Position numbers and translations under genes: made by a program | Shown here: in pieces, positions 10,153 to 32,686 of the stretch | How positions within the stretch are numbered: the first letter of the stretch is position 1 | How the letters are laid out: every line of letters begins with the position of its first letter | DNA from: Octopus sinensis | Taxonomy: Eukaryota | Direction of reading: 5' to 3' | DNA: 64,000 nucleotides | Assembly (NCBI RefSeq): GCF_006345805.1 | Contig: NC_042997.1 | Location: 27,466,001-27,530,000 of the forward strand | The notes under the pieces: generated by a model | What the model was told of the DNA's origin: nothing | Databases searched by the model: none | The model's input: only the letters and a program-made list of their open reading frames with translations

Positions 10153-10235
<83 letters not shown>

Positions 10236-11492: not shown

Positions 11493-11585
<93 letters not shown>

Positions 11586-11634
11586 TATATATATATATAT
11601 TATATATTATATATGTATATATATTTATATCTAC

Positions 11635-11671
<37 letters not shown>

Positions 11672-12695: not shown

Positions 12696-14156
12696 GAACG
12701 GATAGAATAACGATGTATAAATATGTAATCCAGACGTTATTCAATATTTTATGAAAGATTAAGTCGACCACCAAGTGGTTATCATAATTTGCAACATATG
12801 TTGCATAAAACACACATACAATTTTGCATCTTATATAATTGCATATTTTATAAATGAAGTAATAACATCATCATAATAATATATTAGTAAAATTTATTAG
12901 CTAAATGTTTTAAAATCTTTTGTCCCCTTAAATTGAATAATTTAATATTCAACTGTGCAACAGTATATTTATAAAAAAATAAAAAATACCCGAGTATCCG
13001 GTCATCGTGATTTATATCGTGAGTGTATATATTCATATAGCACATAGGGGCCCTATTGTAACAGATATATACACACGCATACATGCATGCGTATATTTAC
13101 ACATACATACCTATGCTTGCACTCATATATATCCATATGTTCGTAAATGCGTATGTAAACACACACACACACACGCACATATATATACTTAGAAACGTAT
13201 AATTACACTCATGCATACACATATACATAAATGCTTACATGCGTACGTGCATACATTACCTCTTCCGAGAAGGGCTTATTATTATTTTAACAATTTTATA
13301 AAATTCTTATTTATACAACGTATTAAAGGTTTATTATAATGCGTTCATATAATTTTTCGAAGTGTATAACTTCCCATATGCATAAGAAAGTTCGATATCT
13401 TTTCTTCTTCTTATGTAATGTTTTGTAATACAGTAAATAAAGAAGAGATATATAAATGTGTACTGAATTGTAATGGGATGCATAAGATTGAATAAAGTTT
13501 ATATTATAAATGCAGAATTGTTCTTTGTTTATTTCGTATTTTATATTTTTGATTTATATGCACGCGCACGTTAACTCACTCTAGGGATGAATGAAGAATG
13601 TCCAGGAGATATTGTTCATAAAATGCAAATATACAATCGAAACTGCTTGTGTTTTTCTCCTCTATACCCTACAACGGAAGGTGAAGGTTAACTGAGATTG
13701 CAATTGCATTTGGCGAAATACTGAGATACGGTCATTCGTTAAAACTATGCAATCTATTCAAAATGAATAATATAGTGCGCCAGCGTGATTACAGCCCTAG
13801 GGTTAAAACGCACATGACAATAATAAAAACAACAGCAGCAGCAACAAGAAAAACAACAATATAACAATAGCAATCTTAATAATGATGATGATGATGATGA
13901 CGATGATGATGATGATGATAATAGTGTGTGGAATGCTGGAGGGTAATGTAAAATTCATACCAGTGGTGATCGGAGCGTTGGGATAAATCCCATTGAAGCT
14001 ACAAAACTTCTTAAGACAACTGATGTCTTGCCAAAAGCAGCCTTATTGGGCACAGCGCATGAATTAAGGCAAATATTATCTGTCCGAGGTCCTTGTTGTG
14101 ACTTCACAGATAAGTAAAAACTCTGGTGCATTCTTACCTACAGTGTGTTACAAAGA

Positions 14157-14157
<1 letters not shown>

Positions 14158-14250
<93 letters not shown>
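14158..14250 (+). repeat. (TAA)n microsatellite at 5' junction of a Dong/R4 element
   Basis: Direct reading. Confidence 0.95.
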
Positions 14251-14251
<1 letters not shown>

Positions 14252-17200
14252 GATAATAAAGAAGTTCTTGAGGCCTTCTACCATGCCATATATTTCCCCA
14301 CAGATAAGTCTAGCACTGTACAAGCATACTTAAACTGGAGACAGAAACACCCTGAAGTAAGACCCTACATAGACAGTAACAAGCTTGCCAATGTTAGAAG
14401 AAACATTATAAAAAAGAAATTACTGACTGAAGTAGAGATTGATCAGGTTAGACAAGCAATATCGGATAAAATGAACGAAGCTGCAGCTAGAGAAGATAAT
14501 ACAGAGGAAATGATTATAGACCAGCCCAGGGCGGATAAAAACGAAGAGAGGATTGAAAGAGTTAGTATAAGTGATAGGCAAAGTGAAATACGCCATGAAC
14601 CAATCATAAATACTAAAACAGATGAGCATCAAATAGATAAAGAAAGTCACACAAATATTGACCCAACAGAACTACATGAGCTAAAAAATCAAATCATGAT
14701 TGAATGGCTGAAAATTAAAGAAACCAGCATGGATGAGCGTGATACACTTCCTAAAATCCGCAACGCTAACCAAAACATGAAAATAATTGGTAAAATCCGG
14801 CTTGCACTTAAGGATATAATTTCAGTTAATGATGTTGATATCACAAACCTCAACCACCTATACTATGCATCCGCGAAAATCTCAACGATCCTATGTGGTG
14901 TAAAGATTAGAAAACGGCAACAGTCCCACAAAAAGCCTTCTTGGCAAGAGCGTCTGCAACAACAAATTAAAATATTTAGATCTGACATTGAATATTTGAA
15001 AAACCTTAAGGCTCACAAGACTACCAAACCTACAAAAAACCCAAAAATTACTGAAAAAATACAATATGAAAACTATACTTGATATTGATGCCACCATAGA
15101 AACCATCAAACAAAAGGTATCTGCCAAAGCTGCCCGCATAGCGAGGTATGAAAAGCGTGTTAGATTTTTCAAGGACAACAACATGTTCAAAAATAACACC
15201 AAGAATTTTTACAGGAAGATAGGAAAAACAGCGTTACTGCAGGGTCTGTACCATCAAAGAAGAAGTGCAGAGATTCTGGAATAAAATCTGGGCAGAAGAA
15301 AAAAACACACAACGAAAGGTCCCTGGATTGACAGAATATCTACAGAACTGGACCCCTTAGAAGAGCAAAAGTGGGAGGGTGTCAAGGTAGAAGATATAAG
15401 ATCTGCTCTCAGGAGGTCAAGCAAATGGAAGTCTCCAGGAAAGGATAAAATTCCTAACTTCTGGCTGAATGCCTTCCCAGAGAGCCATGAACTGCTAACA
15501 GAACTGTACAATGATGTTTTGCAACACCCTAGTAGGATGCCTCCTTGGCTAGTTAATGGGTTAACATTCCTGTTTCCAAAACGTGAAGAAACAAATGAAC
15601 CAAAAAACTATAGACCCATAACCTGCTTAACAACTATGTACAAAACACTAACATCTGTCCTGACGGAATATACCTATAGTTTTTTAACAGACAGCAGCAT
15701 ATTCCCTAATGAACAGAAAGGATGTAAACGTGGATCCTACGGCTGTAAAGACCAACTACTCATCAATAAGATGATCTTAGAAGATTGTCACAAACGACAC
15801 AAAAACTTATCAATAGCCTGGATAGACTATAAAAAGGCTTTTGATAGCCTACCACATAGCTGGATTAGGAAATGCCTTGAAATGTATAAGATAGCACCAA
15901 CTCTGCGAAACTTCTTGACTGTAAGTATGAGATCATGGAGAACCACACTAACTCTGAACAGTGACAGTGAATCCCTAAATGCTGGTGATGTAAAAATTTC
16001 GTGTGGCATTTTCCAGGGTGACTCACTGTCACCACTCCTCTTTTGTTTATCCTTAATACCTCTCTCAAAGCTGCTCAATGACGCGCAGTACGGGTATAAA
16101 ATGTTTGGTAACCATATAAATCATCTCGTTTACATGGATGATTTAAAGCTTTTTGCAAAAAATGATCAACAACTCAAGGGCTTACTAGCGATAGTCAAAC
16201 AATTCAGTGACGACATCAGAATGCAATTCGGCCTCGATAAATGTGCAAAGGCTACCTTTATCAAAGGAAAAATGACAGAAACATCTAACGTTAACCTTGA
16301 CCAACAGAATGTCATAAAAGAACTAGACCCAGCGGAGAGCTACAAGTACCTAGGGGGGTAATTGAGGGAACGGAATAAGGCATTCAGAGATGAAGGAAAG
16401 GATCAGGAGAGAATGCTATCGAAGAGTGAGAGCAATACTCAAGACAGAGCTGAATGCAAGAAACAGGATCGAAGCAATCAATGCATTAGCTATACCAGTC
16501 GTGACTTACAGTTTCAATATTGTTAACTGGTCAATTACTGAAATATGTCAGCTCGACAGAAAAATAAGGAAACTGTTGACAATGCATAGAATGCACCACC
16601 CTAAGGCAGATACAGAACGACTCTATCTGCCAAGAAAAGAGGGAGGCCGTGGTCTTTTGCAACTGGCAAAACAATGAAGATTGCTACAATTGGCCTAGAC
16701 ACCTACCTGAAAAACTCTGAGGACTGGATGTTAAAACTTGTCTCAAAACATGAAAACAAGAAAGCATCATACTCAGTCACAAAACAGGCAAAGGAATATC
16801 TAAGTGAATTCCGAATACAACCAATTTCGGAATTAGAGATAGATATACAAGAAACAAGCACAGAAAAAGCTAGGCGCATGAAAACCCGTGCCAAAACTGC
16901 GGCCTTAGATATTCTGAATAATAAATGGCAAGAAAAACCTCTCTATGGCAAATACCCAAAGAGAGCGAATAATGCAGATATCGACAAAGCCCTGACCCAT
17001 CAATGGCTAATGGCCTCTGGCTTAAAATCTGAAACAGAGGGGTTTATCATAGCAGCTCAAGATCAATGCCTACCAACAAGAAACTACCAGGCCAACATAT
17101 TAAAGATCAGAAGCAGTCCAACGTGTCGTGTATGCAAGCAACAAAATGAAACCATTGACCATGTGGTCTCCAAGTGCAGTCTTCTAGCGCCTACAGAGTA

Positions 17201-17915
17201 TCTCAACAGGCACGATAGAGCTGCACAATATATTCACTGGGTAATCTGTAAAAACCTGGATTTGCCCCATGAAAAAAACTGGTGGGAACACAAACCACCA
17301 CCCCAGTGCTTGAAAATGACCACATCTCACTCCTCTGGAACTTCACCATTCAAACTGACAGGAAGATAGATGCAAATAGGCCAGACATCATATTGAAAGA
17401 CTTCAAACAAAGAACATGCCTCCTCATTGATATGACTGTCCCAATCGATATAAACGTATCTGTCAAGACCTACCAAAAACTGAGCAAATATAAAGATCAT
17501 GAAATAGAAATCAGCAAAATGTGGAAGCTGAAGACTAAAACAATACCTGTTGTCATAGGTGCCCTGGGAATGATAGCAAAAGGGGCTGTTCAGCTACCTA
17601 ACTCAGATACCAGGAAACCCAAAATTGGCAGAAGTTCAAAAGATAGTGCTCATGGGAACTGCTCATATCCTACGGAAAATACTCTCTATGTAATCTCAAA
17701 GTTTAAAACAAACATAATTTTCGGTTTAAAAAAACAAAAAACAAAAAAAAACACTTTTTTTTAGACATTCATTAGTACAACATCCCCACCCCCCAAATAT
17801 ATGGCACACTAGGCATAACAACAACATGAACTTCCAACCCTGTTGTCTCTTGAGGTCTCTGGGTGAGACTTGGAGCCAACTTGTACAAATATAAAGCAAA
17901 AGTCAAAAGAATAAA
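14250..17915 (+). mobile_element. R4/Dong-type RLE non-LTR retrotransposon, family A, nearly full length, frameshifted
   Basis: Consecutive ORF pieces: RT (NYRPITCL, EQKGC, WIDYKKAFDS, GIFQGDSLSP, YMDDLK), CCHC knuckle (CRVC..ETIDHVVSKC), RHD motif, RLE (RPDII..K..LIDMTVP..KLSKY); flanked by (TAA)n on both sides. Confidence 0.9.
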
Positions 17916-17939
17916 ATAATAATAATAATAATAATAATA

Positions 17940-18014
<75 letters not shown>

Positions 18015-18016
<2 letters not shown>

Positions 18017-20255
18017 GCTCACGAAGGGGAAAACCATCTTAATTCCCAAATCAAATGAAACAACAAAACCAGAAAACTACAGACCAATAACCTGCCTCCC
18101 TACTATGTTCAAGGCATTTACTGCAGTGATATCGCAAAGGCTGAACAAGCACCTGGACGAAAACAAACTGTTCCCAGAAGAGCAGAAAGGATGCCGCAAG
18201 GGCTCATATGGCTGTAAAGATCAACTAATGATTAATAAAGCCGTAACTGAAGACAGCCACAGAAAGAAGAAAGGCCTCAGTATGGCCTGGATTGACTACA
18301 AAAAGGCGTTTGATAGCATCCCCCACACATGGATCCTCGAAACACCAGCCATTAACAAAGTAGCACCAACAATCATAAAATTCTATGAATAAATGGCAAA
18401 CAGTGCTACACCTCCAAACAAAAGAGGGACTCATGAAAACCAAAGACATCCCCATTAGAAGAGGAATATTCCAGGGAGACACGCTCTCTCCACTCCTTTT
18501 CTGCTTGGCACTGTCACCTCTATCTGATATGCTAAATAGAACTGGATGCGAATATAAATGTTACGGCAAAACGATCAGCCACCTTTTATATATGGATGGC
18601 CTAAAACTATACGCTGCAAATGACAAACAGCTGGAAACACTATTAAAGACAGTTCATGGATTTACCAAAGAAATAGATATGAAATTTGGATTAGAAAAAT
18701 GCGCCAAAGTAACCATGAAAAAAGAGGAAAACTAGTTAAGAGTAACAACATCATACTAGATAAAACCAATGAAATAAAAGAATTAGACCAAAGCCAAACT
18801 TACAAATACTTAGGAATCCATGAACTAGATAAGACACAACACACACACAAATGAAAGAGAAAATAAAAAAAGAATATTATAGACGAGTTAGATCAATACT
18901 AAAAACAGAGCTCAATGCTAAAAACAAGATAATAGGTATTAACACTTTAGCTGTCCCAGTTATAAGTTACAGCTACAATATCCTTAACTGGACACGAAAT
19001 GAACTGTCCAAAATAGATAGGAAAATAAGAAAAATACTGACAGGATCTAGGATGCATCACCCAAAATCTGACATAGAAAGACTATATATACAACGTATAG
19101 AAGGTGGTAGAGGCCTTATACAGCTGGAAAACTACTATAAAATAACCACCATAGGACTGCAAAAATACCTACTTCAGAAGGAAGGAAAACTGATCCAGAT
19201 AGCAGCAAAACACGAGCAAAACAAAAAAACTGTTCTCAGTATTTAAGGAAGCTGACAAATACAAACAAGAAATCATACCACCTAATAAACACAAAGAAGA
19301 AGAAGAAGATGATGAAGAAACAACAAAAGCTATAAAACAAATGAAATCCAAACTAAAATAGAACAGCAACGAGCCATGATAAAACGATGGCAAGAAAAGC
19401 CCCTTCATGGTAAATACTGCACTAAACTAAACGCAAAAGAAATAGACAAAGGAAAAATCCCAGCAATGGTTGAGAAGCTCAGGACTCAAAGCAGAAACAG
19501 AGGGATTTTTAATTGCAGCACAAGACCAAAGCCTCCCCACAGAAATTACCAAAACATGTAATGAAAAGAAATATTACAAGTAACTGCAGAAATGTGGAGA
19601 TGGACAAGAACAAACAATAAATCATATTATCTCTAGCTGCCCAGTCCTGGCTAAGAAGGAATATATTCACAGACATGACAGAGTTGGAACCTACATACAT
19701 TGGAAGCTATGCCAACATTATGGAATAACAACAGAAAAAAGATGGTATAGGCACACACCAGAAAAGGTCACAGAAAACGAGAAAGCAACCATACTCTGGG
19801 ATATGCCGATACACACAGATAGAGAAATTAAGGCCAACAGACCAGATATAGTTGTCAGAGATCATGAAGAAAAAAAATGCTTTCTAATTGATGTATCAAT
19901 ACCGGCAGATGACAACGTGTCTCTAAAGAAATGGAGAAACTCTCAAAATACAAAGACCTGGAAATAGAGATAACTAGAATGTGGAACCTGAAAACAGAAA
20001 CAATTCCTATCATAGTAGGTGCATTAGGCATGATAAAAAAATATTCAGACAAATACATAACTAAAACACCAGGACTTACAAACACATATAACATACAGAA
20101 AATTGCACTACTAGGCACTGCACACATCCTACGCAGAACACTTTCCATACAATAACCATCAGAGCATCACAGCAAATCACAGCACATACCCAAGGCACAC
20201 AGAGCTGCGCTCGGTAGTGAAGTGAAAGCACGCTATAAAAATAAAACTACTGAAT
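18015..20255 (+). mobile_element. R4/Dong-type element, family B, 5'-truncated
   Basis: RT motifs (GIFQGDTLSP, LYMDGLK), RHD and RLE pieces; 3' UTR ends in (TAA)n; roughly 96% similar to 25340-28140. Confidence 0.9.
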
Positions 20256-20308
20256 AATAATATAATAATAATAAAATAATAATAATAATAAACTGATAAT
20301 AATAATAA

Positions 20309-20345
<37 letters not shown>

Positions 20346-20389
20346 TAATAATAATATAATATAATAATAAAATAATAATAATATGTTGT

Positions 20390-20502
20390 GATGCATGTGC
20401 CTGGTGTACTCTTATCAGACGGGTAGTCATGATAGGTATATTGGGCTTCGTATATTTTACCCCAGTGTCACTTTGATGGCATGAACTGCTCTCTCACTCA
20501 AT
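20390..20502 (-). mobile_element. Fragment of the ~555-bp (ATT/TAA)n-embedded element
   Basis: Reverse complement of the first ~110 bp of 29062-29615. Confidence 0.7.
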
Positions 20503-20559
20503 AATAATAATAATAATAACAACAACAACAACAACAACGATAATAATAATAATAATAAT

Positions 20560-20990
20560 GCCTCCTCGTTGACATAACTCTTCCAACTGACATAAACGTA
20601 CCAAAAACTGAGCAACTATAAATATCTTGAAATAGAAATTGGCAATATGTGGAACCTCAAGACGAAAAGAATACTTGCTGCCATAGGGTGCCCTAGGAAT
20701 GATAGCAAAGGGGTTAATTGCTACCTAGCTAAGATATTAGGAAATCCCAAAATGGCAGAAATACAAAGGATAGTGCTCGTGGGAACTGCCGATATCTGCA
20801 TAATATATTGTGTATGTAATTTCAAATTTTAAAACAAACTCATAATCTCCTTATGTTTCTCTAACATTCTCTAGAACAATACTATGTGCGAAACCAAATA
20901 TATGATACCCTTGGCATAACACCAACAGGAATTTCTATGTTGTTGTCTCTGGAGGTCTCTGGGTGAGACTTGGAGCCAACTTGTACAAAT
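20560..20990 (+). mobile_element. Dong family A 3' fragment
   Basis: KLSNYKYLEIEIGNMWNLKTK and 3' UTR motif GGTCTCTGGGTGAGACTTGGAGCCAACTTGTACAAAT shared with 17860-17900. Confidence 0.8.
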
Positions 20991-21089
20991 GCAAAGCAGA
21001 AGTAGACTGACAGCAGAGCTTGAACCAATCTAACGCCACCACTCTAAAACATCGAAGCAGGTTGAGCCACAGTGAGAGAAGCTGATAAA

Positions 21090-21372
21090 CTGTAATTTTA
21101 CAACCTGGAACTAAGGTACGCCACTTATGTAATAATCTGCATATGGAAATCCCTATTAGGGCTAGTGTATAGTTTGAGTGTTATACAAATGTCAGAACTG
21201 GACGTCATTTAAGCATTTTATCTGATCAAATTCGTCCTATGGTTGTGGAACTGTTTCCGGAGGGAAACGCAATCTTTCAGTGTGATGATGCACCAATTTA
21301 CACAGTTAAACTTGTTACTGAATGGCACCAGGAACATTCTAGTGAAGTTGAACATCTTATCTGGCTACCTCA
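21090..21372 (+). mobile_element. Tc1-like (DD34E) transposase fragment
   Basis: [43 protein letters not shown]; mirrored at 23950-24205. Confidence 0.75.
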
Positions 21373-21403
21373 GTCTTTGGAAATAATTCAAAGTTTTTAT
21401 ATA

Positions 21404-21498
<95 letters not shown>

Positions 21499-21663
21499 GC
21501 ATACATGCATACATGCTTACAATCCAACCTATCTACCTACCTACCTACCTACACACACACATACATACATACATACACTTCAGACTAGATATAATGATTT
21601 GGGATATAAAAGGAAAAATGTGTATAGTTGTAGAAAAATGTGTATAGTTGTAGAAATCAGCTG

Positions 21664-22015
21664 CCCTGTGTAGATTTCATCCTCTCGAGGAACAATCAAA
21701 ATGTTCTTTTGTGCCCGCCAACTCCAGAGTTGTCATTAACAACAACAACTTGCAATGTTCATCTTCTGGCATCTAAAGAAAGCCTTTGACAAAGTCCTCC
21801 GTCCAGCAATGTGGATCGTCCTTGCTGGCTTTGGATGTCCGGAGGACTTTATTGCCCATCACAACGACATGGTGCGTAGGGTATGTCATCAAAATCCCCT
21901 TACAGACCCGTTTCCCATCACTGGAGGCCTTAAGCAAAGATGCGAACTGGCACCAATCTGTTTTTCTTTGTTCAACGAAATCCTACTAGACTTGTTTCAA
22001 TCAACATGCGCTATC
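21664..22015 (+). mobile_element. RTE-type RT fragment, left side of P2 centre
   Basis: FIFWHLKKAFDKV...FGCPEDFI...GGLKQRCELAPICFSLF (RT motifs); reverse complement of 22021-22380. Confidence 0.8.
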
Positions 22016-22020
22016 CAAGT

Positions 22021-23080
22021 GATAGTGCATGTTGACTGGAGCAAGTCAAGTAGGATTTCGTTGAGCAAAGAAAAACAGGTTGGTGCCAGGTCGCATCTTT
22101 TCTTAAGGCTCCCACTCATGGAAAACGGATCTGTAAGGGGATTTTGATGACACACCCTACGCACCATGATGTCGTGAAGGGCAATAAAGTCCTCCGGACA
22201 TCCAAAGCCAGCAAGGACGAAACAAATTGCAGGACGGGCGACTTTTTCAAAGGCTTTCTTTAGATCTCAGAAGATGAACATTGCAGGCTGTTTTTGTTAT
22301 TGACATTTCTACTGGAGTTGGCGGGCACAAAAGATCATTTTGATTGTATTGTTTCTCGAGAGGATGAAATCTACACAGGGACTCAGGGAGGACGTATTCC
22401 ACGAGGAAGTGGTGGCGACTGAGTAAGATGCGGGCGAATATGTTACTTGCAATACTCAAGACTGAGATGCTCCGATAGTTTTTGGAATCCTCTCGATCTC
22501 CGATCTTGTAGATGACGATGATAGTTGCATCGCGAAAGTCGTTCGGGAGGATCTTGCTTATCCAGATCTTGAGGATAAGTAACATCAGGTGATTTTTCAG
22601 CTCAGGACATTCGTGCGTGGAAAACTCAATCGGGATGTTATCTGGTCCTGGATCTTTGCCCAGCTTCATGCGCTCGAATGCCTACTTAAACACATGGGTC
22701 GGGGTCGACAGGGACAGCTAATGACGGATGAGGAGCTTTTGGGTGTTGTGGAGGAGATCGTCAGGTGTGCGTGGGTGGCTGTTAAGTAGGCTCTCGAAAT
22801 GGCATCCAAGAATTGATTTTTGCTGGTATGTTGCTTGCATCACATTCAAGTTTTTGTTTAGATTGACCAGACCAAACTACTTTGGGTCGCACGAGACAGT
22901 TTTATTCTAAGAGAACCTGCACAGTAGTTCTTCACCAACTCTGAAGTTGTTGCTACTCTCGCTTTTGATTCTGCATGGAATGTACTCATTTCTTTCTTTA
23001 ATTTGCAGCAGGTGTTGCCTGAGTGGTACAATGCGACATTAAAAAGCTGTCTGAACTGATTTGATGCCTCTATCACTATC
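22021..23080 (-). mobile_element. RTE-type RT fragment, right side of P2 centre
   Basis: GKDPGPDNIPIEF...FRDATIIVIYKIGDREDSKNYRSISVLSIASNIFARILLSR. Confidence 0.8.
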
Positions 23081-23149
23081 ACTTCGTCTCACAAGAATCC
23101 TATCTGATAATATGGATTTTGCCATTGGTTGTTATCACTTTCCATGTGT

Positions 23150-23700
23150 CGCTATGTATGTATGTATGCATGTATGTATTTATACATATGTATGTACGTC
23201 ATTGTTCAGTTTCATTTCACGATTTCTTGCCAATAGAAAAAGAGCCGGCTTCTACCTTGGTTCAAAGCCCCTTCATTGGAATTTCAAGGTCAACAACAGG
23301 GCATGTATGTATGTATATATGTACAGAGTTGGATGTTTTAGTTTACGTATGAATTCTCATGTATATCTATACATGCTCCTATATATTTAAATGATAAACT
23401 TCAGGAAGGTTTTACAGATTTTTACAGTTCTAATCATGGATTGCATCTGTGGTCATCGAAGTAGCTTTCTGCTTTCTGGTTTTGAGAAGCCTTATTTCTG
23501 AAGATTGGTATTTAGGCAGTGTGTTAGATTTCCAAGGGCCCTCACAATTACAAGTATAAACCTGAACTTGTAATCTGGATACAGAAACTATAGATTTCAC
23601 ATTAATTGAGCGTAGGTATTCTCTTTTTCACTGATCTTTAGCTTTAAGTTAACATCCGCTGGGCAGCTGATTTCTACAACTATACACAGTTGTATAATAA
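23150..23700 (-). mobile_element. RLE-type non-LTR retrotransposon 3' fragment
   Basis: Degenerate YPDYKFRFILVIVRALG...TVKICKTFLKF C-terminus; related copy at 33330-33920 and short piece at 21580-21666. Confidence 0.6.
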
Positions 23701-24205
23701 TGGAAACAGCATAGAATATCAAACAAATTTATTGTAATAAGGAGTAGGACGGCCTTTGGCAGTAATTACACCTTCAATTCTACGAGGTATAGATTCATAC
23801 ATAGTTTGAATTGTTTCCAAGGGAATTTTTGTCCATACTTCAGCTAAAGCTGTCTCCAGTTCTTGGAGTGATGAAGGTGGAGGATATCGACTCTTTACAT
23901 CTCTTTCTAAAATCCACCATAAACTCTTAATAATATTGAGATCTGGGAACTGTGGTCACCAGACAAGATGTTCAGCTTCACTAGGATGTTCCTGGTGCCT
24001 TTCAGTAACAAGTTTAGCTGTGTAAATTGGTGAATCATCATCCTGAAAGATTGCCTTTCTCTCCGGAAACAGTTCCACAAACTTAGGATGAATTTGATCA
24101 GATAAAATGCTTAAATGATATCCAGTTCTAAAATTTGTATAACACTCAATGCCGAAATTACACACTAGCCATTATAGGGATTTTCATATGCAGATTATTA
24201 CATAG
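23700..24205 (-). mobile_element. Tc1-like (DD34E) transposase fragment
   Basis: FQDDDSPIYTAK...PDLNIIKSLWWILER...SIPRRIEGVITAKG.PTPY. Confidence 0.8.
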
Positions 24206-24399
24206 GTGGCGCGCATTAGCCCCAGGGTGTAAAGTTGCTGTTTTATCAGCTCTTCCCATGGTAGCTCAACCTTCGTCGAGTTTGCGAGTGGTGGCGATAG
24301 ACTGTTTCACGCTCTGTTGTCAGTCTACCACGATAAGGTAATGAAAGCTAAGAGCAGGAGTGCAAGTGGCTTAGAAAAAAGGTCATTCGTAGGGTCAAT

Positions 24400-25180
24400 A
24401 TAGCTTCTTAATTTTTTGAAGTAGCTTAGTATCCATCATGACTGTTGCCTGCATTTTGTTGCCATTTTGGTAATGGGCATATGAAATTATGCACCGTTGC
24501 ACATAATGATCCCCAAGTATTTAACTGCTAGTGAATCTGGGAATGCAGCGCCTTTGAATCCTGTATATACCGACTGCAGTGCATTACTAAGTTTACATTG
24601 TAGTGCCTGGGGGATGACGCATAGAATTTGACTTTCCTCAGAACGAGCAGCATCATTGTCTGCATCTGCGTCTATTGTGTCTTTAAGGACGTCATTCAGA
24701 CACTCTCCCAGTTTATCAACTATGCCAATGTCTCGCAGCTTACGACATTTCATGCAATCATCGACCTTATCGAATGCTTTGCAAAGTCAAGGTATATCAC
24801 ACTGACATCCGAATGCTCAAGCGACTGTTTGGAAACCCAGTCATAATGCTGTATGTGTTGTGTGAGGCAGCTTCCTCCTCAACGAAAACCATGCTGTGTA
24901 TTGTTAAGTAGGTTATTATCATTATTTTTTTAGGAACAATATCAGTTTCTTTCTGAAAATTCATTTCATATTTTTACTAACATGTGAAGTCAGAGAGATT
25001 AGCCTGTAGTTTTTGTCCTCTGCTCAGCGCCCACCTTTGTGGATAGGGCAAATAATAACTTCATTTAGCTATTCTTGAAGTTTACCCCATGCAAGAAAAC
25101 TCTGGAAAAGTATGTGAAATTGTTTTGATAAAGCTAGCTTACGTGACTTTAGGAGAATAGCTGGCAAGCCATCGAGACCA
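24400..25180 (-). mobile_element. Degenerate CR1/L2-like RT fragment
   Basis: VSVIYLDFAKAFDKVD..KLRDIGIVDKLGE at ~24700-24850. Confidence 0.55.
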
Positions 25181-25192
25181 TTATTGTTGTTG

Positions 25193-25258
<66 letters not shown>

Positions 25259-25263
25259 CATCA

Positions 25264-25339
<76 letters not shown>

Positions 25340-25343
<4 letters not shown>

Positions 25344-28140
25344 TAGTTTTATTTTCTATAGCGTGCTTTCACTTCACTACCGAGCGCAGCTCTGTGTGCC
25401 TTAGGTATGTGCTGTGATTTGTTGTGATGCGTAGGATGTGTTCAGTGCCTAGTAGTGCAATTTTCTGTATGTTATATGTGTTTGTAAGTCCTGGTGTTTT
25501 TGTTATGTATTTGTCTGAATATTTTTTTATCATGCCTAATGCACCTACTATGATATGAATTGTTTCTGTTTTTAGATTCCACATTCTGGTTACCTCTATT
25601 TCCAGGTCTTTGTATTTTGAGAGTTTCTCCATTTCTTTTAGAGAAACTTTGTCATCTGCCGGTATTGATACATCAATTAGAAAGCATTTTTTTCTTCATG
25701 ATCTTTGACAACTATATCTGGTCTGTTGGCCTTAATTTCTCTATCTGTGTGTATCGGCATATCCCAGAGTATGGTTGCTTTCTCGTTTTCTGTGACCTTT
25801 TCTGGTGTGTGCCTATACCATCTTTTTTCTGTTGTTATTCCATAATGTTGGCATAGCTTCCAATGTATGTAAGTTCCAACTCTGTCATGTCTGTGAATAT
25901 ATTCCTTCTTAGCCAGGACTGGGCAGCTAGAGATAATATGATTCATTGTTTCTCGTCCATCTCCACATATTCTGCAGTTACTTGTATATTTCTTTTCATT
26001 ACATGTCTTTTGGTAATTTCTGGTGGAGAGGCTTTGCTCTTGTGCGGTAATTAAAAATCCCTCTGTCTCTGCTTTGAGTCCTGAGCTTCTCAACCATTGC
26101 TGGGATTTTTCTTTGTCTATTTCTTTTGCATTTAGTTTAGTCCAGTATTTGCCATGAAGGGGCTTTTCTTGCCATCGTTTTATCATGGTTCGTTGCTGTT
26201 CTATTTTTATTTTGGATTTCATTTGTTTTATAGCTTTTGTTGTTTCTGCATCATCTTCTTCTTCTTCTTCTTCTTCTTCTTCTTCTTCTTCTTCTTCTTC
26301 TTCTTCTTCTTCTTCTTCTTCTTCTTCTTCTTCTTCTTCTTCTTCTTCTTCTTCTTCTTCATATTTATTAGGTGGTATGATTTCTTGTTTGTATTTGTCA
26401 GCTTCCTTAAATACTGAGAACAGTTTTTTGTTTTGCTCGTGTTTTGCCGCTATTTGAATCAGTTTTACTTCCTTCTGAAGTAGATATTTTTGCAGTCTTA
26501 TGGTGGTTATTTTATAGTAGTTTTCCAGCTGTATAAGGCATCTACCACCTTCTATACGTTGTATATATAGTCCTTCTATGTCAGAGCCTGTCATTATTTT
26601 TCTTGTTTTCCTATCTATCTTGGTCAGTTCATTTAGTGTCCAGTTAAGGATATTGTAGCTGTAACTTATAACTGGGACAGCTAAAGTGTTGATACCTATT
26701 ATCTTGTTTTTAGCATTTAGCTCTGTTTTTAGTATTAATCAAACTCGTCTATAATATTCTTTTTCTATTTTCTCTTTCATTTGTGTGTGTTATGTCTTAT
26801 CTAGTTCATGGATTCCTAAGTATTTGTAAGTTTGGCTTTGGTCTAATTCTTTTATTTCATTGGTTTTATCTAGTGTGATGTTGCTACTCTTAACTAGTTT
26901 TCCTCTATTCATGGTTACTTTGGCGCATTTTTCTAATCCAAATTTCATAACTATCTCTTTGGTAAATCCATGAACTGTCTTTAATAGTGTTTCCAGCTGT
27001 TTGTCATTTGCAGCGTATAGTTTTAGGTCATCCATATATAAAAGGTGGCTGATCGTTTTGCCGTAACATTTATATCGCATCCAGTTCTATTTAGTATATC
27101 AGATAGAAGTGACAGTTCCAAGCAGAAAAGGAGTGGAGAGAGCGTGTCTCTCTGGAATATTCCTCTTCTAATGGGGATGTCTTTGGTTTTCATGAGTCCC
27201 TCTTTTGTTTGGAGGTGTAGCACTGTTTGCCATTTATTCATAGAGTGCCCTATGAATTTTATAATTGTTGGTGCTACTTTGTTAATGGCTGGTGTTTCGA
27301 GGATCCATGTGTGGGGGATGCTATCAAACGCCTTTTGCAGTCGATCCAGGCCATACTGAGGCCTTTCTTCTTTCTGTGGCTGTCTTCATGTCTTCAGTTA
27401 CGGCTTTATTAATCATTAGTTGATCTTTACAACCATATGAGCCTTTGCGGCATCCTTTCTGCTCTTCTGGAAACAGGTTGTTTTCGTCCAGGTGCTTGTT
27501 CAACCTTTGCGATATCACTGCAGTAAATGCCTTGTACATTGTAGGGAGACAGGTTATTGGTCTGTAGTTTTCTGGTTTTGCTGTCTCATTTGATTTGGGA
27601 ATTAAGATGGTTTTCCCCTTCGTGAGACATTCAGGCATTGTCTCTGGCTCTGCTAGTATGTTGTTAATGTTTTCAGCCAGCTTTTTGTGCATTCCTGTTA
27701 GATATTTCAACCAGAAGCTGGGGATCTTGTCATGCCCAGGTGCCTAGTCTTTGCAGTGCCTGGGTGACCTCTTCAGTTGTTATGGGGGTCCAAAAATTGC
27801 TCAGATACTGAGTTTGTTGTTTTATTACTCCTTTTTGTTTTTGATTGTTAGTTCGCCGACCATATTCCTTTCCAGAATTCTTCCACTTCTTCTGCCGTTG
27901 GTGCTGCAGTGATTTCTATTTTATTTTTGCCAAGTTCTTGGTAGAACTTTTTGGGGTTGGAGTTGAAATGTTTGTTTTGTTCAAAGAAGCGCTGGCGTTT
28001 CTCGTACCGGCGGATCCTTTGTGCTTTGGCAAGGATATCTTGCTTCAGATTTTCTTTTATCTCAGGTAAATCTTTTTCTGTGATGGTATATTTCGGAGTA
28101 TTTTTGTTTTCTTTTTGTTGCTCAGTAGCGTTGATTGTCT
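25340..28140 (-). mobile_element. R4/Dong-type element, family B
   Basis: RT and RLE ORF pieces (25369-25632, 25677-26594, 26790-27080, 27324-27710); (GAA)n expansion giving poly-E; flanked by (TAA/ATT)n. Confidence 0.9.
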
Positions 28141-28165
28141 AATTTAATAATTGTTATTGTCTAAT

Positions 28166-28218
<53 letters not shown>

Positions 28219-28679
28219 TATTATTATTATTATTATTATTGTTATTACTATTATTATTATTATTATTATTATTATTTTATTATTATTATTATTATTATAT
28301 TATTATTATTATTATTATTATTATTCCTTTGTAGCACACTGTAGGTAAAAATGCACCGAGTCTTTACTTTTCTGTAAAGTCATAACTACCTCACACAGAT
28401 AATATTTGCCTTAACTCATGCGCTGTGCCCAATAAGACTGCTTTTTGCAAGGCATCATTCTTACATGGGATTTCCAGTTGCCTTAAAAAAGTTTTATAGC
28501 TTCAATGGGATTGAGCTCAACGCTCCGATAACCACTGGTATCAATTTTACATTACCCTCTCGCATTCCATACAGTCGTGCCATTTCCTCTTTCATGTCAT
28601 TTGGTATGTTCACATCAATGATCTGACAGCATTTGCCTCCCTTATTTAAATTGACATTATTATTATTATTATTATTCTA

Positions 28680-28831
28680 TGTTTGACTTTTGCTTTATGT
28701 CTGTACAAGTTGGCTCCAAGATTCACCCAGAGACATCAAGAGACAACAGGTTGGAAGTTCACGTTGTTGTTATGCCTAGTCTGCCATATATTTTTTTTGT
28801 TTTTTTTTGTGTTGTACTAGTGAATGTCTAA

Positions 28832-28862
<31 letters not shown>

Positions 28863-29000
28863 AAGTTTGTTTTAAACCTTGGGATTACATAGAGAGTATT
28901 TTGCGTAGGATATGAGCAGTTCCCATGAGCACTATCTTTTGAATTTCTGCCATTTTGGGGTTTCCTGGTATCTGAGTTAGGTAGCAATCATTCCCAGGGC
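28680..29000 (-). mobile_element. Dong family A 3' fragment
   Basis: PGNPKMAEIQKIVLMGTAHILRKILSM plus family A 3' UTR. Confidence 0.8.
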
Positions 29001-29001
29001 A

Positions 29002-29035
<34 letters not shown>

Positions 29036-29061
29036 TTATTATTATTATTATTATTATTATT

Positions 29062-29615
29062 GAGTGAGAGAGCAGTGCAAGCCATCAAAGTGACACTGAT
29101 TTAAAATATACGAAGCCCAGTACAACAATCATGACTACCCGTCTGATAAGGGTACACCAGGCACATGCATCACAACCATATGTGCGTGACATGGTGATCT
29201 CATATCAAGATAAACAACACATGACATTGCAGGTGGGGCCCAGTCAGAATTTTCTTCTGGTCGAGTAGCCCATCCCGCTCAAAAGGTCCCTGAATAAGGG
29301 TTGTTTAAGGATATTGAACGAAACACCCATGTTTCCAGAGGTGAATTATTCAAACCCCAAAGAATCCCTCTCAACACATGACTATGCTGCTCCCCCACTA
29401 CTTCTGCTCGTGATCAGAGCTGCACATATCGTCAGCCGCTAAGGGACATGCCCAACCGGTTAAGGTCAAACAACTGACAAGCAAATCTGTGGTATTGAGC
29501 AGAATATTTGCTGTAGCCCATCTTTTATACCAAGACAAAACAATGTACATGATAACACTTCCAATCAGTAAAGATCAGAAGCCACGAGGGCCACTGCCTG
29601 GTACTGCATCATGGC
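29062..29615. mobile_element. ~555-bp non-coding interspersed element embedded in (ATT)n
   Basis: Begins GAGTGAGAGAGCAGTGCA..CCATCAAAGTGACACTG; copies at 45676-46230 and 62141-62690, each flanked by (ATT)n. Confidence 0.8.
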
Positions 29616-29616
29616 A

Positions 29617-29662
<46 letters not shown>

Positions 29663-29806
29663 TATTATGATTGTCATTGTTATGATATTGTTATATTTTT
29701 GCTTTTGTTGTTGTTTCTGCTGTTATTTTTATCGTTGTCATGTGCGTTTGAGCCCTAGGGCTATAATCACGTTGGCGCACTAATATATTATTGATTTTGA
29801 ATAGAT

Positions 29807-30222
29807 TACTCTTTTACTCTTTTACTTGTTTCAGTCATTTAACTGCGACCATGCTGGGGCACCGCCTTTAGTCGAGTAAATCGACTCCGGGACTTATTCT
29901 TTGTAAGCCCAGTACTTATTCTATCGGTTTCTTTTGCCGAACCGCTATGTCACGGGGACGTAAACACACCAGCAATGCTAGGGGGACAGGCAATGCTAGG
30001 GGGACAAACACAGACACAAACACATACACACACATACATATATACATATGCATATATACGACAGGCTTCTTTCAGTTTCCGTTTACCAAATCCACTCACA
30101 AGGCATTGGTCGGCCCGGAGCTATAGCAGAAGACACTTGCCCAAGATGCCACGCAGTGGGACTGAACCCGGAACCATGTTGTTGGTTAGCAAGCTACTTA
30201 CCACAGAGCCACTCCTGCGCCT
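29807..30222 (-). mobile_element. tRNA-derived SINE family 1
   Basis: Head GGCGCAGGAGTGGC..TGTGG / GGTTCAGTCCC (A/B-box-like), tail (TAAAAGAG)n; absent from mirrored site near 13770. Confidence 0.85.
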
Positions 30223-30834
30223 ATTGCATAGATTTACCGAATGACCGTATCTCAGTATTTCGCCAAATGCAATTGCAATCTCATTTAACCTTCACCTTGC
30301 GTTGCAGAGTATACAGGAGAAAAACACAAACAGTTTCGACTGCATATTTGCATTTTATGAACAATATCTCCTAGACATTCTTCATTGATCCCTAGAGTGA
30401 GTTAAAGTGTGTATGCTTATAAATCTAAGATATAAGATACATAAGAAACAAAGAACAATTCTGCGTTTATAATATAAAATTTATTCAATCTTATGGATCC
30501 AATTACAATTCAACACATTTTTATATGTCTCTTCTTCATTTACTGTATTACAAAATATTATATAAGAAGGAAAAAATAAATTCGAAGTTTCTTATACATA
30601 CACGAAATTATACACTTCGAAAAATTATATGAACGCATTATAATAGACCTTTAATACATTCTATAAATAAGAATTTTATAAAATTCTTAAAACAATAATA
30701 AGCCCTTCCCGGAAGAGGTAATGTATGCACGTACGCATGTAAGCATGTATATATGTGTGTATGCATGTGTGTAATTATATATCTCTAAGTATATATATAT
30801 ATATGTATATGTGTATATGTATATATATATATAT

Positions 30835-31160
30835 GTGAAGGCGCATGGCTCAGTGGTTAGAGCGTCGAGGTTGTGAGCTCGAATCCCGGACCGGGCTGCG
30901 TGTTGTGTTCTTGAGCCAAGCACTTTATTTCACGTTGCTCCAGTTCACTCAGCTGTAGAAATGAGTTGCGACGTCACTGGTGCCAAGCTGTATCGACCTT
31001 TGCCTTTCCCTTGGATAACACTGGTGGCGTGGAGAGGGGAGGCTGGTATGCATGGGCGACTGCTGGTCTTCCATAAAAAAAAAACCTTGCCCGGACTTGT
31101 GTCTAGGAGGGTAACTTTCTAGGTGCAATCCCATGGTCATTCATGACCGAAGGGGTCTTA
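30835..31160 (+). mobile_element. tRNA-derived SINE, right arm only
   Basis: GGCGCATGGCTCAGTGGTTAGAGCG...CTCGAATCCCG head followed by CTTGAGC.AAGCACTTTATTTCAC core. Confidence 0.7.
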
Positions 31161-31572
31161 TTATATATATACGCATTTACACACATATGGATATATATGA
31201 GTGTAAGCATAGGTATTTATGTATGTAGGTATGTATGTGTGAATGTACGCATGCATGTATGCGTGTGTATATATCTGTTACACTCGGGCTCTATGTGCTT
31301 ACGTGAATATATACATTCACGATATAACTCACGATACCCGAATACATTTTAAGTGGACAAAATATTTTATTTCATTTGGCTAATAAATTTTACAAATATA
31401 TTATTATGATCATATTATTACTATATTTATAAAATATGGAATTATATAAAACATGTGTTTTATGCAACATATGTTGCAAGTTATGGTAACCACTTGGTGG
31501 TCGACTTAATCTTTCATAAAATATTGAATAACGTCTGGATTACATATTTATACATCGTTATTCTATCCGTTC

Positions 31573-32100
31573 TTACGACTCGTATTCATCGTTGCTTCCA
31601 CCTTTTCGTGAGTCGGCTTTTCGTGCACATGCACAAGCTGTGGCTACTTCAATCACTTTTGGTTTATACACGTACAGTCCATCAACACATTCATCGGTAC
31701 GTTTAAGGACAGTCATTGGAGTATATACCATCACACATTCGTGGTTGTTGTCTGAATCGAAGCAGCCGTTACAGCGACACACTGCTTCGGTGCGGGATGG
31801 AGGGAAAACTGTTGAATCATGGGTAATATTCAGGTACCAAGGGCAGGTTGAACGTTCACGGATGATATCGCTGGATGAAGGAGACGTTGGGCAAGTTTTA
31901 TCCCCGTCTGTCTGGGAGTTCTGCTTACTTCCGACCGGAGCTCTTTCAACTGGTAGTAAAAAGTTATTGCCAATAGCTGCACGGGACAATGTCTGGTACT
32001 GAACCTTCAGATTGGCTGGTATTTTACACTGGTCTGGAATTGATGCCGATGATACAAGAAAGGCGATGTTGAATAGAAATATGACGATGCTGGAGAGAAC
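31573..32100 (-). CDS. IL17: IL-17-like cytokine copy B, exon 2
   Basis: Same acceptor and frame as copy A; 6 nt differences in 528 nt by manual comparison, one amino acid change (A to V in APAGS/APVGS). Confidence 0.92.
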   Translation of the reverse strand, partial: VLSSIVIFLFNIAFLVSSASIPDQCKIPANLKVQYQTLSRAAIGNNFLLPVERAPVGSKQNSQTDGDKTCPTSPSSSDIIRERSTCPWYLNITHDSTVFPPSRTEAVCRCNGCFDSDNNHECVMVYTPMTVLKRTDECVDGLYVYKPKVIEVATACACARKADSRKGGSNDEYES

Positions 32101-32632: not shown

Positions 32633-32686
32633 CTGATAAATTATTTTCTGATTATAAAATTGATCGCCAACCGTATATAAAATCAT
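32633..32686 (-). CDS. IL17: IL-17-like copy B, candidate first coding exon (MILYTVGDQFYNQKIIYQ)
   Basis: ATG at 32686, 18 open codons, CAG|gtaact donor in phase 0 matching exon 2; TATA-like ATATAAAG ~160 nt upstream. Confidence 0.6.

What the first reader, a model, noticed from the sequence alone, without database searches (positions are those of the whole stretch)
21664..22380. Centre of palindrome P2: 5-nt spacer joining ~14-kb arms
Seen: ...caacatgcgctatc CAAGT gatagtgcatgttg... at 22016-22020, inside an RTE RT fragment whose 3' part is missing; mirrored homology continues out to ~7980 and ~36560 and places IL-17 A and B tail to tail ~9.3 and ~9.6 kb from the centre. A 5-nt loop resembles an opened hairpin-capped break. 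The tip is only ~88% identical, so it is old and stable. Unlike P1, the fold is internal to the LINE rather than at a 5' end.
Basis: partly seen in the sequence, partly recalled or inferred. Interest (0 to 1): 0.8.

Follow-up and report, generated by a model that had tools for sequence, protein, structure and literature searches.

The report
Old inverted duplication of octopus IL-17
A real, old 28-kb mirror-image duplication in the Octopus sinensis genome, folded at a 5-base loop inside a broken retrotransposon, made a second IL-17 immune gene; it is a well-preserved example of a known way that gene families grow, not a new kind of element.

Summary
The window is Octopus sinensis CM016859.1:27,466,001-27,530,000. 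At 22016-22020 a 5-nt spacer (CAAGT) joins two inverted arms, 8173-22015 and 22021-36548 (13.8 and 14.5 kb). Eleven colinear blocks align at about 90% identity. Differences are mostly substitutions, plus arm-specific TE insertions and deletions, so this is not a read or haplotig artefact. The fold lies in an RTE-like reverse-transcriptase fragment. Both copies stop at the same base, before the YADD motif. IL-17 A and B lie tail to tail, 9.3 and 9.6 kb from the centre. Corrections: 21664 and 22380 mark a later 1.28-kb left-arm deletion, not the RTE edges. P1 also folds inside an RTE of the same family. At P1 the spacer and a 6-bp stem are native RTE sequence, the signature of foldback priming. 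The same test could not be run for P2. P2 (K about 0.12) is older than P1 (K about 0.04). A third IL-17 copy lies just left of the window, so orientations alternate. The IL-17 exon and one LINE block show arm-to-arm gene conversion. Verdict: a new member of a known kind (germline foldback inverted duplication), of moderate interest. The recurrence of one RTE family at both centres is unexplained.

The parts
22016..22020 (.). 5-nt unique spacer CAAGT, the centre of palindrome P2 (CM016859.1:27,488,016-27,488,020)
8173..22015 (+). Left arm of P2 (13,843 nt), carrying IL-17 A
   Evidence: colinear BLAST chain
22021..36548 (-). Right arm of P2 (14,528 nt), carrying IL-17 B
21664..22015 (+). Left copy of the RTE-like RT fragment (RVT_1 profile 70-143/205), reading into the centre. 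Its 5' part was removed by a later deletion.
22021..22816 (-). Right copy of the RTE-like RT fragment (RVT_1 profile 6-143/205, with upstream RT N-terminal region), reading into the centre. It ends at the same base as the left copy.
22381..23660 (-). About 1.28 kb present only in the right arm (RTE 5' part plus flank). In the left arm the flanking element's end joins directly to the RT at 21663/21664 with a 3-nt 'ccc' microhomology, which indicates a secondary deletion.
12168..12695 (+). Main exon of IL-17 A (XP_029646807.1 = P0034; gene model 8529-12695)
31573..32100 (-). Main exon of IL-17 B (XP_036365846.1 = P0001; gene model 31573-32885)
12100..12800 (+). Arm-to-arm gene-conversion tract over the IL-17 exon and the start of the 3' flank (partner about 31470-32170). 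There are 8 differences in 700 nt, against 11-19% in the flanks.
18013..20383 (+). LINE block (RVT_1, zf-RVT) shared with the right arm (25203-27631, - strand) at K = 0.03-0.04, far below its neighbours. Probably a second conversion tract.
14260..17935 (+). Left-arm-specific LINE (RT ORF 15519-16361), absent from the right arm. Inserted after the duplication.
29809..30225 (.). Right-arm-specific copy of a dispersed SINE-like repeat of about 415 bp
21002..21663 (+). DDE-type (Tc1/mariner-like) transposase remnant flanking the RTE. Its mirror copy is at 23661-24328 (-). The Pfam DDE_3 hit is weak and below the cut-off.
6407..6448 (.). Centre of the neighbouring palindrome P1: 30-nt spacer 6413-6442 flanked by a 6-bp stem (cgcctg / caagcg). 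Stem and spacer are native RTE sequence.
6443..6950 (+). RTE 3' piece (P0055 residues about 252-432) reading out of the P1 centre. Its mirror copy is at 5911-6412 (-). Same family as the piece at the P2 centre.

Best explanation
P2 is a genuine, old, germline inverted segmental duplication (a foldback-type palindrome) in the IL-17 gene cluster of Octopus sinensis. An ancestral single-copy segment carried one IL-17 gene, a LINE, a DDE-transposon remnant and a 5'-truncated RTE-like element. Its DNA was interrupted inside the RTE, about 30-40 codons upstream of the RT's YADD motif, either by a double-strand break or by a stalled replication fork. The free 3' end folded back on its own strand, or switched from the leading to the lagging template, leaving a 5-nt loop. 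It then primed synthesis back along about 14 kb. This produced a second, inverted IL-17 gene and lost the 3' half of the RTE. The inverted copy was rejoined to the chromosome at an outer junction that now abuts microsatellites. Afterwards the arms diverged to about 10% and gained arm-specific TE insertions. A 1.28-kb deletion 352 nt from the loop broke the symmetry. Patches, including the IL-17 exon, were homogenised by arm-to-arm gene conversion. Later a second foldback (P1), primed at a native 6-bp inverted repeat in another RTE copy of the same family, copied IL-17 A leftwards. It was resolved by recombination inside an older inverted IL-17 paralogue, giving the present order Z(-) A(+) B(-). 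Shown: the structure, colinearity, the truncation point, divergence, conversion, the relative order of events and the P1 priming site. Inferred: the kind of lesion, the snap-back at P2, and how the outer junction formed.
For: Structure. Both RT copies stop at the same nucleotide and at the same RVT_1 profile position (143/205), while native relatives continue ...SIDLRYRLDGG...QYADD. The flanks are mirrored for about 14 kb in 11 colinear blocks. Real divergence: 752 substitutions (ts 434, tv 318) against 71 gap openings in 7,582 aligned nt. There is an arm-specific LINE (14260-17935), a SINE-like insert (29809-30225) and a 1.28-kb deletion. The window contains no N. Order of events: over the same non-coding segment, K(A-Z) = 0.039, K(A-B) = 0.126 and K(Z-B) = 0.121, and site patterns AZ|B far outnumber AB|Z. 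Mechanistic precedent in the same locus and element family: an O. vulgaris RTE copy (L004) reads cgcttg-[30 nt, 23/30 identical to the P1 spacer]-caggcg and then continues into the P1 right arm, whereas the sequence left of the stem is unrelated to the P1 left arm. Literature: yeast foldback inversions use stems as short as 4 bp. Their short-loop class has median loops of about 5 nt, and nearly all are resolved by homology-mediated secondary events (PMC7467729). P1's young tract ends inside the IL-17 exon at about 12600, and beyond that point Z is an older paralogue with K about 0.25. Conversion: 4 third-position differences against 19.9 expected (P = 2e-5), and the LINE block has 3.4% divergence against 11.5% in its neighbours (P = 1e-20).
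Against: No native copy of the RTE spanning the P2 fold could be obtained. L004 lacks P0055 residues about 12-130, and L005 ends at the equivalent of window position 22258. So it is untested whether CAAGT and the adjacent 5-bp stem CTATC/GATAG pre-existed. P2's outer junction gives no clear signature. K values are affected by gene conversion, so the ages and the inference that P1 is younger than P2 are not fully secure. A break-based snap-back and a replication-fork template switch leave the same product and cannot be told apart here.
Confidence: 0.72

Rival explanations
1. A single-event inverted triplication (ODIRA-type, or dog-bone / hairpin-capped extrachromosomal intermediate). In this view P1 and P2 are the two junctions of one amplification of the unit 6443-22015. 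The lower P1 divergence would come from later homogenisation of Z and A.
For: There are three copies with the central one inverted (Z-, A+, B-), bounded by one head-to-head and one tail-to-tail junction with short spacers. The P1 junction sits at a native short interrupted inverted repeat, as ODIRA requires (PMC10766183). Gene conversion does operate in this locus.
Against: The copies do not share extent or age. The Z-side young tract stops at about 12600, and beyond it Z is equally distant from A and B (K about 0.25). It shows no homology to the remaining 9 kb of the unit. The B side stops at the equivalent of 8173 and lacks the RTE 3' piece. K(A-Z) = 0.039 against K(A-B) = 0.126 over 1.4 kb of non-coding sequence.
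Confidence: 0.1
2. Retrotransposon-driven origin. The RTE is not a bystander: RTE sequence, or an RTE retrotransposition intermediate, caused the breaks or snap-backs. One example would be a nascent cDNA self-priming during target-primed reverse transcription.
For: Both centres lie in fragments of one RTE family, each about 80-83% identical to the same O. vulgaris copy. These are the only fragments of that family in 123 kb of octopus DNA examined. P1's geometry fits snap-back of a cDNA 3' end: the 3' part of the element reads out of the centre, with the stem and loop in RTE sequence. LINE-1 integration linked to foldback and breakage-fusion-bridge events has been reported in tumours (PMC7058536, listed; recalled, not re-read).
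Against: P2 has the opposite geometry, a 5' part reading into the centre with the 3' end missing. Target-primed reverse transcription starts at the element's 3' end and cannot produce this. Two cases is a small sample and the association was noticed after the fact. A pre-existing RTE copy that happens to contain a usable short inverted repeat explains P1 equally well.
Confidence: 0.1
3. Assembly artefact: a chimeric foldback long read, a retained haplotig joined in inverted orientation, or a misjoin at the centre.
For: The assembly is built from long reads, and its BUSCO-duplicated fraction is 5.2% against about 0.5% in other octopus assemblies (PMC10700109). No reads could be inspected.
Against: A chimeric read or a polished foldback would give near-identical arms. 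Here the arms differ by about 10%, mostly by substitutions (ts:tv 1.36; substitutions to gap openings about 10:1). They also differ by kilobase-scale TE insertions and deletions right next to the centre. There is no N in the window. Ten per cent divergence with different TE content is far above what I would expect between alleles (own knowledge; not measured here). Z, A and B are distinct paralogues in a consistent tree.
Confidence: 0.06
4. Only a local LINE hairpin: twin priming, or two independent head-on RTE insertions, with the outer similarity coming from dispersed repeats.
For: A few mirrored hits are dispersed LINE 3' ends and are out of order, for example 17593-17935 and 20381-21003 against 28656-29181.
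Against: Both arms carry the same RT segment and end at the same base, whereas twin priming joins different segments. LINE insertions are 5'-truncated, not 3'-truncated. Unique sequence, an IL-17 gene and a DDE-transposon remnant are mirrored colinearly for 14 kb.
Confidence: 0.01

Closest known systems
Foldback inversions / inverted duplications formed by snap-back priming at short inverted repeats (yeast GCR assays, PMC7467729 and PMC10622511; human constitutional inverted duplications, PMC3907307)
   Same: Two inverted arms are joined by a very short unique loop (5 nt at P2, 30 nt at P1). Sequence distal to the fold is lost. At P1 there is a native 6-bp stem. At P1 the event was resolved by recombination with a homologous sequence.
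   Different: This is a fixed, interstitial, multi-million-year-old germline product in an animal genome, not a de novo terminal rearrangement. The human cases usually have kilobase-scale disomic spacers and adjacent terminal deletions. The native stem at P2 is not demonstrated.
ODIRA inverted triplications (SUL1 amplification in yeast; PMC10766183)
   Same: There are three adjacent copies with the middle one inverted, and the junctions lie at short interrupted inverted repeats.
   Different: The copies differ in extent and in divergence (K 0.04 against 0.12), which points to two separate events. The outer copies do not run through the unit ends. The presence of a replication origin cannot be tested.
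Ampliconic sex-chromosome palindromes maintained by arm-to-arm gene conversion (human Y P1-P8 and X palindromes; own knowledge)
   Same: The arms are over 10 kb and carry a duplicated gene pair, and there is evidence of arm-to-arm gene conversion centred on the gene.
   Different: Those arms are over 99% identical along their whole length, with spacers of kilobases. Here identity is about 90% with only two converted patches, the spacer is 5 nt and the locus is an immune cytokine cluster.
Tandemly clustered IL-17 expansions in marine invertebrates (31 genes reported in O. bimaculoides; PMC8353272)
   Same: Same gene family, same clade and a clustered arrangement.
   Different: The literature I found describes 'tandem repetitions'. 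Here the recent copies alternate in orientation (+ - + -), and the junctions show inverted rather than tandem duplication.
LINE twin-priming inversions
   Same: Inverted LINE pieces meet at a sharp junction.
   Different: Twin priming joins different parts of one element within target-site duplications and does not duplicate the flanks. Here the same RT segment and 14 kb of flank are mirrored.

Membership tests
Foldback (snap-back) inverted duplication | Two colinear arms in inverted orientation | tested here: met
   11 colinear blocks from 21664/22380 out to 8173/36548
Foldback (snap-back) inverted duplication | Short unique loop at the axis (short-loop class, under 15 nt) | tested here: met
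   5-nt non-palindromic spacer CAAGT; hairpin z = -20; class definition from PMC7467729
Foldback (snap-back) inverted duplication | Loop and inner stem pre-exist as a short inverted repeat in the unduplicated sequence | not testable with these tools
   For P2, neither reference RTE copy covers the fold and no orthologous locus was reachable. For the neighbouring P1 the feature is met.
Foldback (snap-back) inverted duplication | Sequence distal to the fold is lost from the junction | tested here: met
   The RT stops at RVT_1 position 143/205 in both arms. No RTE 3' half lies beyond 36548 or next to the centre.
Foldback (snap-back) inverted duplication | Secondary resolution of the inverted copy, usually homology-mediated | tested here: inconclusive
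   The P2 outer ends abut GT/CA-GC/TA microsatellites that are not mirror images. P1's end lies inside an older inverted IL-17 paralogue.
ODIRA inverted triplication | Three copies, with the central copy inverted | tested here: met
   Z(-), A(+), B(-)
ODIRA inverted triplication | All copies have the same age and span the same unit | tested here: not met
   K(A-Z) = 0.039 against K(A-B) = 0.126. The Z tract ends at about 12600 and the B arm ends at the equivalent of 8173.
ODIRA inverted triplication | The amplified unit contains a replication origin | not testable with these tools
   No origin data exist for octopus
Breakage-fusion-bridge ladder | Successive inverted junctions generated within a few cell cycles (equal age), with a terminal deletion or healing site | tested here: not met
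   The junctions differ about three-fold in divergence. The locus is interstitial, at 27.5 Mb of a 213-Mb chromosome.
LINE twin-priming inversion | Inverted and direct pieces are different parts of one element, and the flanks are not duplicated | tested here: not met
   The same RT segment is in both arms (profile 70-143 and 6-143), and 14 kb of flank is mirrored
Conversion-maintained ampliconic palindrome (Y-chromosome type) | Arm identity over 99% along the arms, through ongoing gene conversion | tested here: not met
   Overall identity is 90.1%. Only the IL-17 tract (about 99%) and a LINE block (about 96.5%) are homogenised.
RTE clade of non-LTR retrotransposons (the element at the fold) | Clade-level placement of the RT / APE endonuclease | not tested
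Only Pfam RVT_1 and unnamed RT homologues were obtained.

The most novel reading that the evidence does not exclude
One RTE-like family acts as a recurrent initiator of foldback palindromes in the octopus germline. Either its sequence carries short inverted repeats that capture broken or stalled 3' ends, or abortive retrotransposition (snap-back of nascent cDNA) seeds them. If so, retrotransposon copies would dictate where immune-gene families such as IL-17 are duplicated in alternating orientation.
Probability: 0.12. Interest if true: 0.7.

Novelty: new member of a known kind. Interest (0 to 1): 0.4.

Why it matters
It shows, at base-pair resolution, how recent members of the expanded octopus IL-17 family arose. 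They came from successive foldback inverted duplications, not simple tandem duplication, and gene conversion then kept the coding exon nearly identical between arms. It is also a natural example of a palindrome with 14-kb arms and only a 5-nt spacer that has survived in an animal germline long enough to diverge by about 10%. An asymmetric 1.28-kb deletion 352 nt from the axis is a plausible stabiliser. The neighbouring P1 provides rare direct evidence, from an evolutionary (not experimental) product, of priming at a native 6-bp inverted repeat. The recurrence of one RTE family at both axes is a testable lead on whether retrotransposons bias where such duplications start.

Tried and rejected
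(1) Independent assemblies: exact-product look-ups of the ORF that spans the fold (21755-22147) and of the right-arm RT ORF (22247-22669) found nothing.

(2) O. vulgaris orthologue: the 90% cluster of IL-17 B contains only the three O. sinensis paralogues. The two O. vulgaris IL-17 loci I fetched (L006, L007) share only dispersed SINE-like repeats with this region. A search with the right-arm LINE ORF returned no octopus orthologue; the best hit was 87% on a 990-bp contig.

(3) O. bimaculoides pre-duplication state: the reciprocal-best orthologue P0002 exists only as a UniRef entry with no contig on record, so I ran no further search on it.

(4) Microhomology test at P2: the two octopus RTE loci (L004, L005) both lack the fold region. 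Protein relatives across the fold cannot resolve a 5-bp stem. The left arm plus spacer reads I-Q-V against native I-D-L, slightly more native-like than the right-arm reading I-T-W. This is only a weak hint that A is the template arm.

(5) 'R5 and R3 are two halves of one RTE copy': rejected for a linear ancestor. R3 lies 15.6 kb upstream of R5 in the same orientation, and P1 and P2 differ in divergence.

(6) Foldback-type transposon or other mobile element: rejected, because the arms consist of unique sequence, a host gene and assorted TEs.

(7) Selection alone as the cause of A/B exon identity: rejected on third-codon positions and because the tract extends into the 3' flank.

Full report
SOURCE. 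The window is eukaryotic: 35.9% G+C and no N. An IL-17 ORF matches Octopus sinensis proteins at 99-100%. The locus fetched for XP_036365846.1 is 100% identical to window 21573-42885. The window is therefore O. sinensis GCA_006345805.1, CM016859.1:27,466,001-27,530,000, plus strand. A second locus (L003) let me extend the view 11.6 kb to the left.

OBSERVATION. The quoted sequence and the 5-nt spacer CAAGT at 22016-22020 are there. The innermost arms are 21664-22015 and 22021-22380, at 87.5% identity with gaps and 89.5% without. The central 157 nt fold as one hairpin with a 5-nt loop, z = -20 against shuffles. Outward, 11 mirrored blocks are colinear as far as 8173 <-> 36548. The arms are 13,843 and 14,528 nt, and about 8.2 kb of each aligns. 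Homology ends sharply at 8173/36548, with a microsatellite just outside on each arm. A few out-of-order hits (17593-17935 and 20381-21003 against 28656-29181) are 3' ends of a dispersed LINE family and do not break colinearity.

CONTENT. PF06083 (IL17) is found in 12279-12695 (+) and 31573-31989 (-). These are RefSeq proteins XP_029646807.1 (A) and XP_036365846.1 (B). They converge on the centre, with stop codons 9,321 and 9,553 nt from it. At the centre, both arms encode the same RT segment reading into the fold. It matches RVT_1 profile positions 70-143 (left) and 6-143 (right) of 205. Relatives continue ...IPPDTPSIDLRYRLDGG...QYADD, so the fold lies about 30-40 codons before the catalytic YADD motif. 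Only RVT_1 membership was tested; 'RTE' remains a label.

The interval 21664-22380 is not the RTE fragment. In the right arm the RT frame runs on to at least about 22816. In the left arm the end of a DDE-type transposon remnant (...gtagaaatcagctgccc) joins directly to tgtgtagatttc.... Those two points are 1.28 kb apart in the right arm, with a 'ccc' microhomology. The DDE_3 hit for that remnant is weak. So the left arm suffered a later deletion, and only 352 nt next to the loop remain symmetric.

IS IT REAL, AND HOW OLD? Across 7,582 aligned nt there are 752 substitutions (434 transitions, 318 transversions) and 71 gap openings. The arms also differ by a 3.7-kb LINE present only on the left (14260-17935), a SINE-like insert present only on the right (29809-30225), and the 1.28-kb deletion. 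A chimeric foldback read or a haplotig would not look like this. The raised BUSCO duplication of this assembly (5.2%; PMC10700109) means long reads should still be checked. K2P is 0.114 at the tip and 0.106-0.149 in neighbouring blocks, so the tip is as old as the arms.

Dating is inference. At 2-5e-9 substitutions per site per year, K of about 0.12 gives roughly 12-30 My. P2 would be younger than the O. sinensis / O. vulgaris split (2.5 My; PMC10700109) only if the rate were at least 2.4e-8.

GENE CONVERSION. Two segments are much less diverged than the rest. The first is the IL-17 tract, about 12100-12800. It has 8 differences in 700 nt, against 11-19% in the flanks. At third-codon positions there are 4 differences where 19.9 are expected (P = 2e-5), and the tract runs into the 3' flank. 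The second is the LINE block 18013-20383 <-> 25203-27631, with K = 0.03-0.04 against about 0.12 in its neighbours (P = 1e-20). Arm-to-arm gene conversion is the simplest reading of both.

CONTEXT. P2 is not alone. P1 (spacer 6413-6442) mirrors 6443 to about 12600 onto sequence running left beyond the window. There a third IL-17 gene (Z, XP_029645913.1, minus strand) lies at about -1628 to -1101. Further left is an older paralogue, Y (+). The orientations therefore run + - + -.

Over the same non-coding 1.4 kb, K(A-Z) = 0.039, K(A-B) = 0.126 and K(Z-B) = 0.121. Site patterns AZ|B dominate. So P2 formed first, and P1 later copied the A arm. P1's young tract ends inside the IL-17 exon at about 12600. 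Beyond that point Z is equidistant from A and B (K about 0.25). The P1 copy was therefore resolved by recombination with, or conversion of, an older inverted paralogue.

MECHANISM. tblastn with RT relatives showed that P1's centre lies in the 3' part of the same kind of RT (P0055 residues about 252-432), reading outward. Both this piece and the P2 piece are about 80-83% identical to one O. vulgaris RTE copy, L004. L004 covers the P1 fold. It reads cgcttg-[30 nt, 23/30 identical to the P1 spacer]-caggcg-cctagaatgcttcc..., whereas upstream of the stem it is unrelated to P1's left arm. So P1's spacer and its 6-bp stem are native RTE sequence. Today the stem is 5/6 complementary in both sequences, differing at a transition site. 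The right (A) arm is the template and the left arm is the new strand. This is the signature of foldback priming at a short inverted repeat.

That signature matches the yeast data: stems of 4 bp or more, short-loop hairpins with a median loop of about 5 nt, and resolution mostly by homology (PMC7467729). A strand switch at a replication fork would give the same product (PMC10766183).

For P2 the same test could not be done. L004 lacks the region and L005 stops short of it. What can be said is limited. The spacer is asymmetric, so it is a loop and not a replicated closed hairpin tip. The five base pairs next to it (CTATC/GATAG) are perfectly complementary. In the RT frame the left arm plus spacer reads I-Q-V where relatives have I-D-L, a weak hint that arm A is the template.

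RIVALS. A single-event ODIRA-type triplication fits the orientations and the P1 junction. It fails on the equal extent and equal age of the copies. Breakage-fusion-bridge cycles fail for the same reason, and because the locus is interstitial. Twin priming and independent insertions fail because the same RT segment and 14 kb of flank are mirrored. Assembly artefact is unlikely, at about 6%.

UNEXPLAINED. The only fragments of this RTE family in 123 kb of octopus DNA that I examined sit at the two palindrome axes. The chance of that is roughly 1e-3 to 1e-2, and the pattern was noticed after the fact. They cannot be two halves of one linear copy, because R3 lies 15.6 kb upstream of R5 in the same orientation. 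P1's geometry, but not P2's, would also fit snap-back of a nascent cDNA.

KNOWN OR NEW. IL-17 expansion in octopus and its clustered arrangement are known (PMC8353272). Foldback inverted duplications and conversion in palindromes are also known. I found no description of this palindrome or of alternating-orientation IL-17 copies. It is a new member of a known kind, of moderate interest (0.4). Its main value is as a well-preserved natural product with base-level evidence of how it formed, plus the RTE lead.

LIMITS. No reads, no second assembly of this locus and no unduplicated orthologue were reachable with the tools. Dates rest on assumed rates. Conversion blurs K.

Noticed in passing
window 6407-6448 (P1 centre), compared with L004:4680-4760: P1's 30-nt spacer and the flanking 6-bp stem (cgcctg / caagcg) are native sequence of an RTE-like element. 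An O. vulgaris copy reads cgcttg-[23/30 identical]-caggcg and then continues into the right arm. P1 therefore folds inside the element, not at a LINE 5' end.
   Followed up: yes
window 5911-6950 and 21664-22816; L004; L006; L007: Both palindrome axes lie in fragments of one RTE-like family: the 3' piece at P1 and the 5' piece at P2. No other fragment of that family occurs in 123 kb of octopus DNA examined.
   Followed up: partly
left of the window: about -1628 to 2280 (gene Z) and -11215 to -10688 (gene Y), from L003: A third near-identical IL-17 gene (XP_029645913.1, minus strand) lies just off the left edge and is the P1 mirror of IL-17 A. An older paralogue (P0026, plus strand, about 79% nt identity) lies further left. 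Orientations alternate + - + -.
   Followed up: yes
window about 12600 (inside the IL-17 A exon): The young A/Z tract ends here. Z's C-terminal tail (…TRNVDGDDDYES against …SRKGGSNDEYES) and its downstream flank come from an older paralogue (K about 0.25), so Z is a mosaic gene.
   Followed up: yes
window 8792-9236 / 9291-9734; also 2494-2940 / 2993-3426 and 34931-35467 / 35449-35963: An internal tandem duplication of about 500 bp (81-83% identity between its two units) is present in all three copies of the segment, so it predates P2.
   Followed up: partly
window 29809-30225, 37954-38358, 43943-44357, 53888-54305, 58853-59273, 63607-64000; ext -885 to -469; L006:14556-14989; L007:17741-18090: A dispersed SINE-like repeat of about 415 bp, at 82-91% identity among copies, also occurs in unrelated O. 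vulgaris loci. It accounts for many of the long inverted and direct hits in the right half of the window.
   Followed up: no
window 43361-43843 (+): A further IL-17-like reading frame, at most 67% identical to any protein retrieved and with no near-identical annotated product. It may be a divergent or decaying paralogue.
   Followed up: no
window 50054-50421 <-> 54471-54851 (91.6%) and 52132-52323 <-> 55248-55445 (92.9%): More inverted pairs in the right half of the window, with different mid-points (about 52450 and about 53790). An unrelated RT-like hit lies at 52450-52767. This could be another, rearranged inverted duplication.
   Followed up: no
window 8529-8612, 3606-3689: The annotated first exon of IL-17 A (28 aa) lies in the triplicated segment and has a 96% copy on the Z side. 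The RefSeq models of Z and B use different first exons, so the three paralogues are annotated with different 5' structures.
   Followed up: no
window 8100-8172 and 36549-36640: Both outer ends of P2 abut GT/CA-GC/TA microsatellites. These have the same strand polarity and are not mirror images, which may be a trace of how the inverted copy was rejoined.
   Followed up: partly
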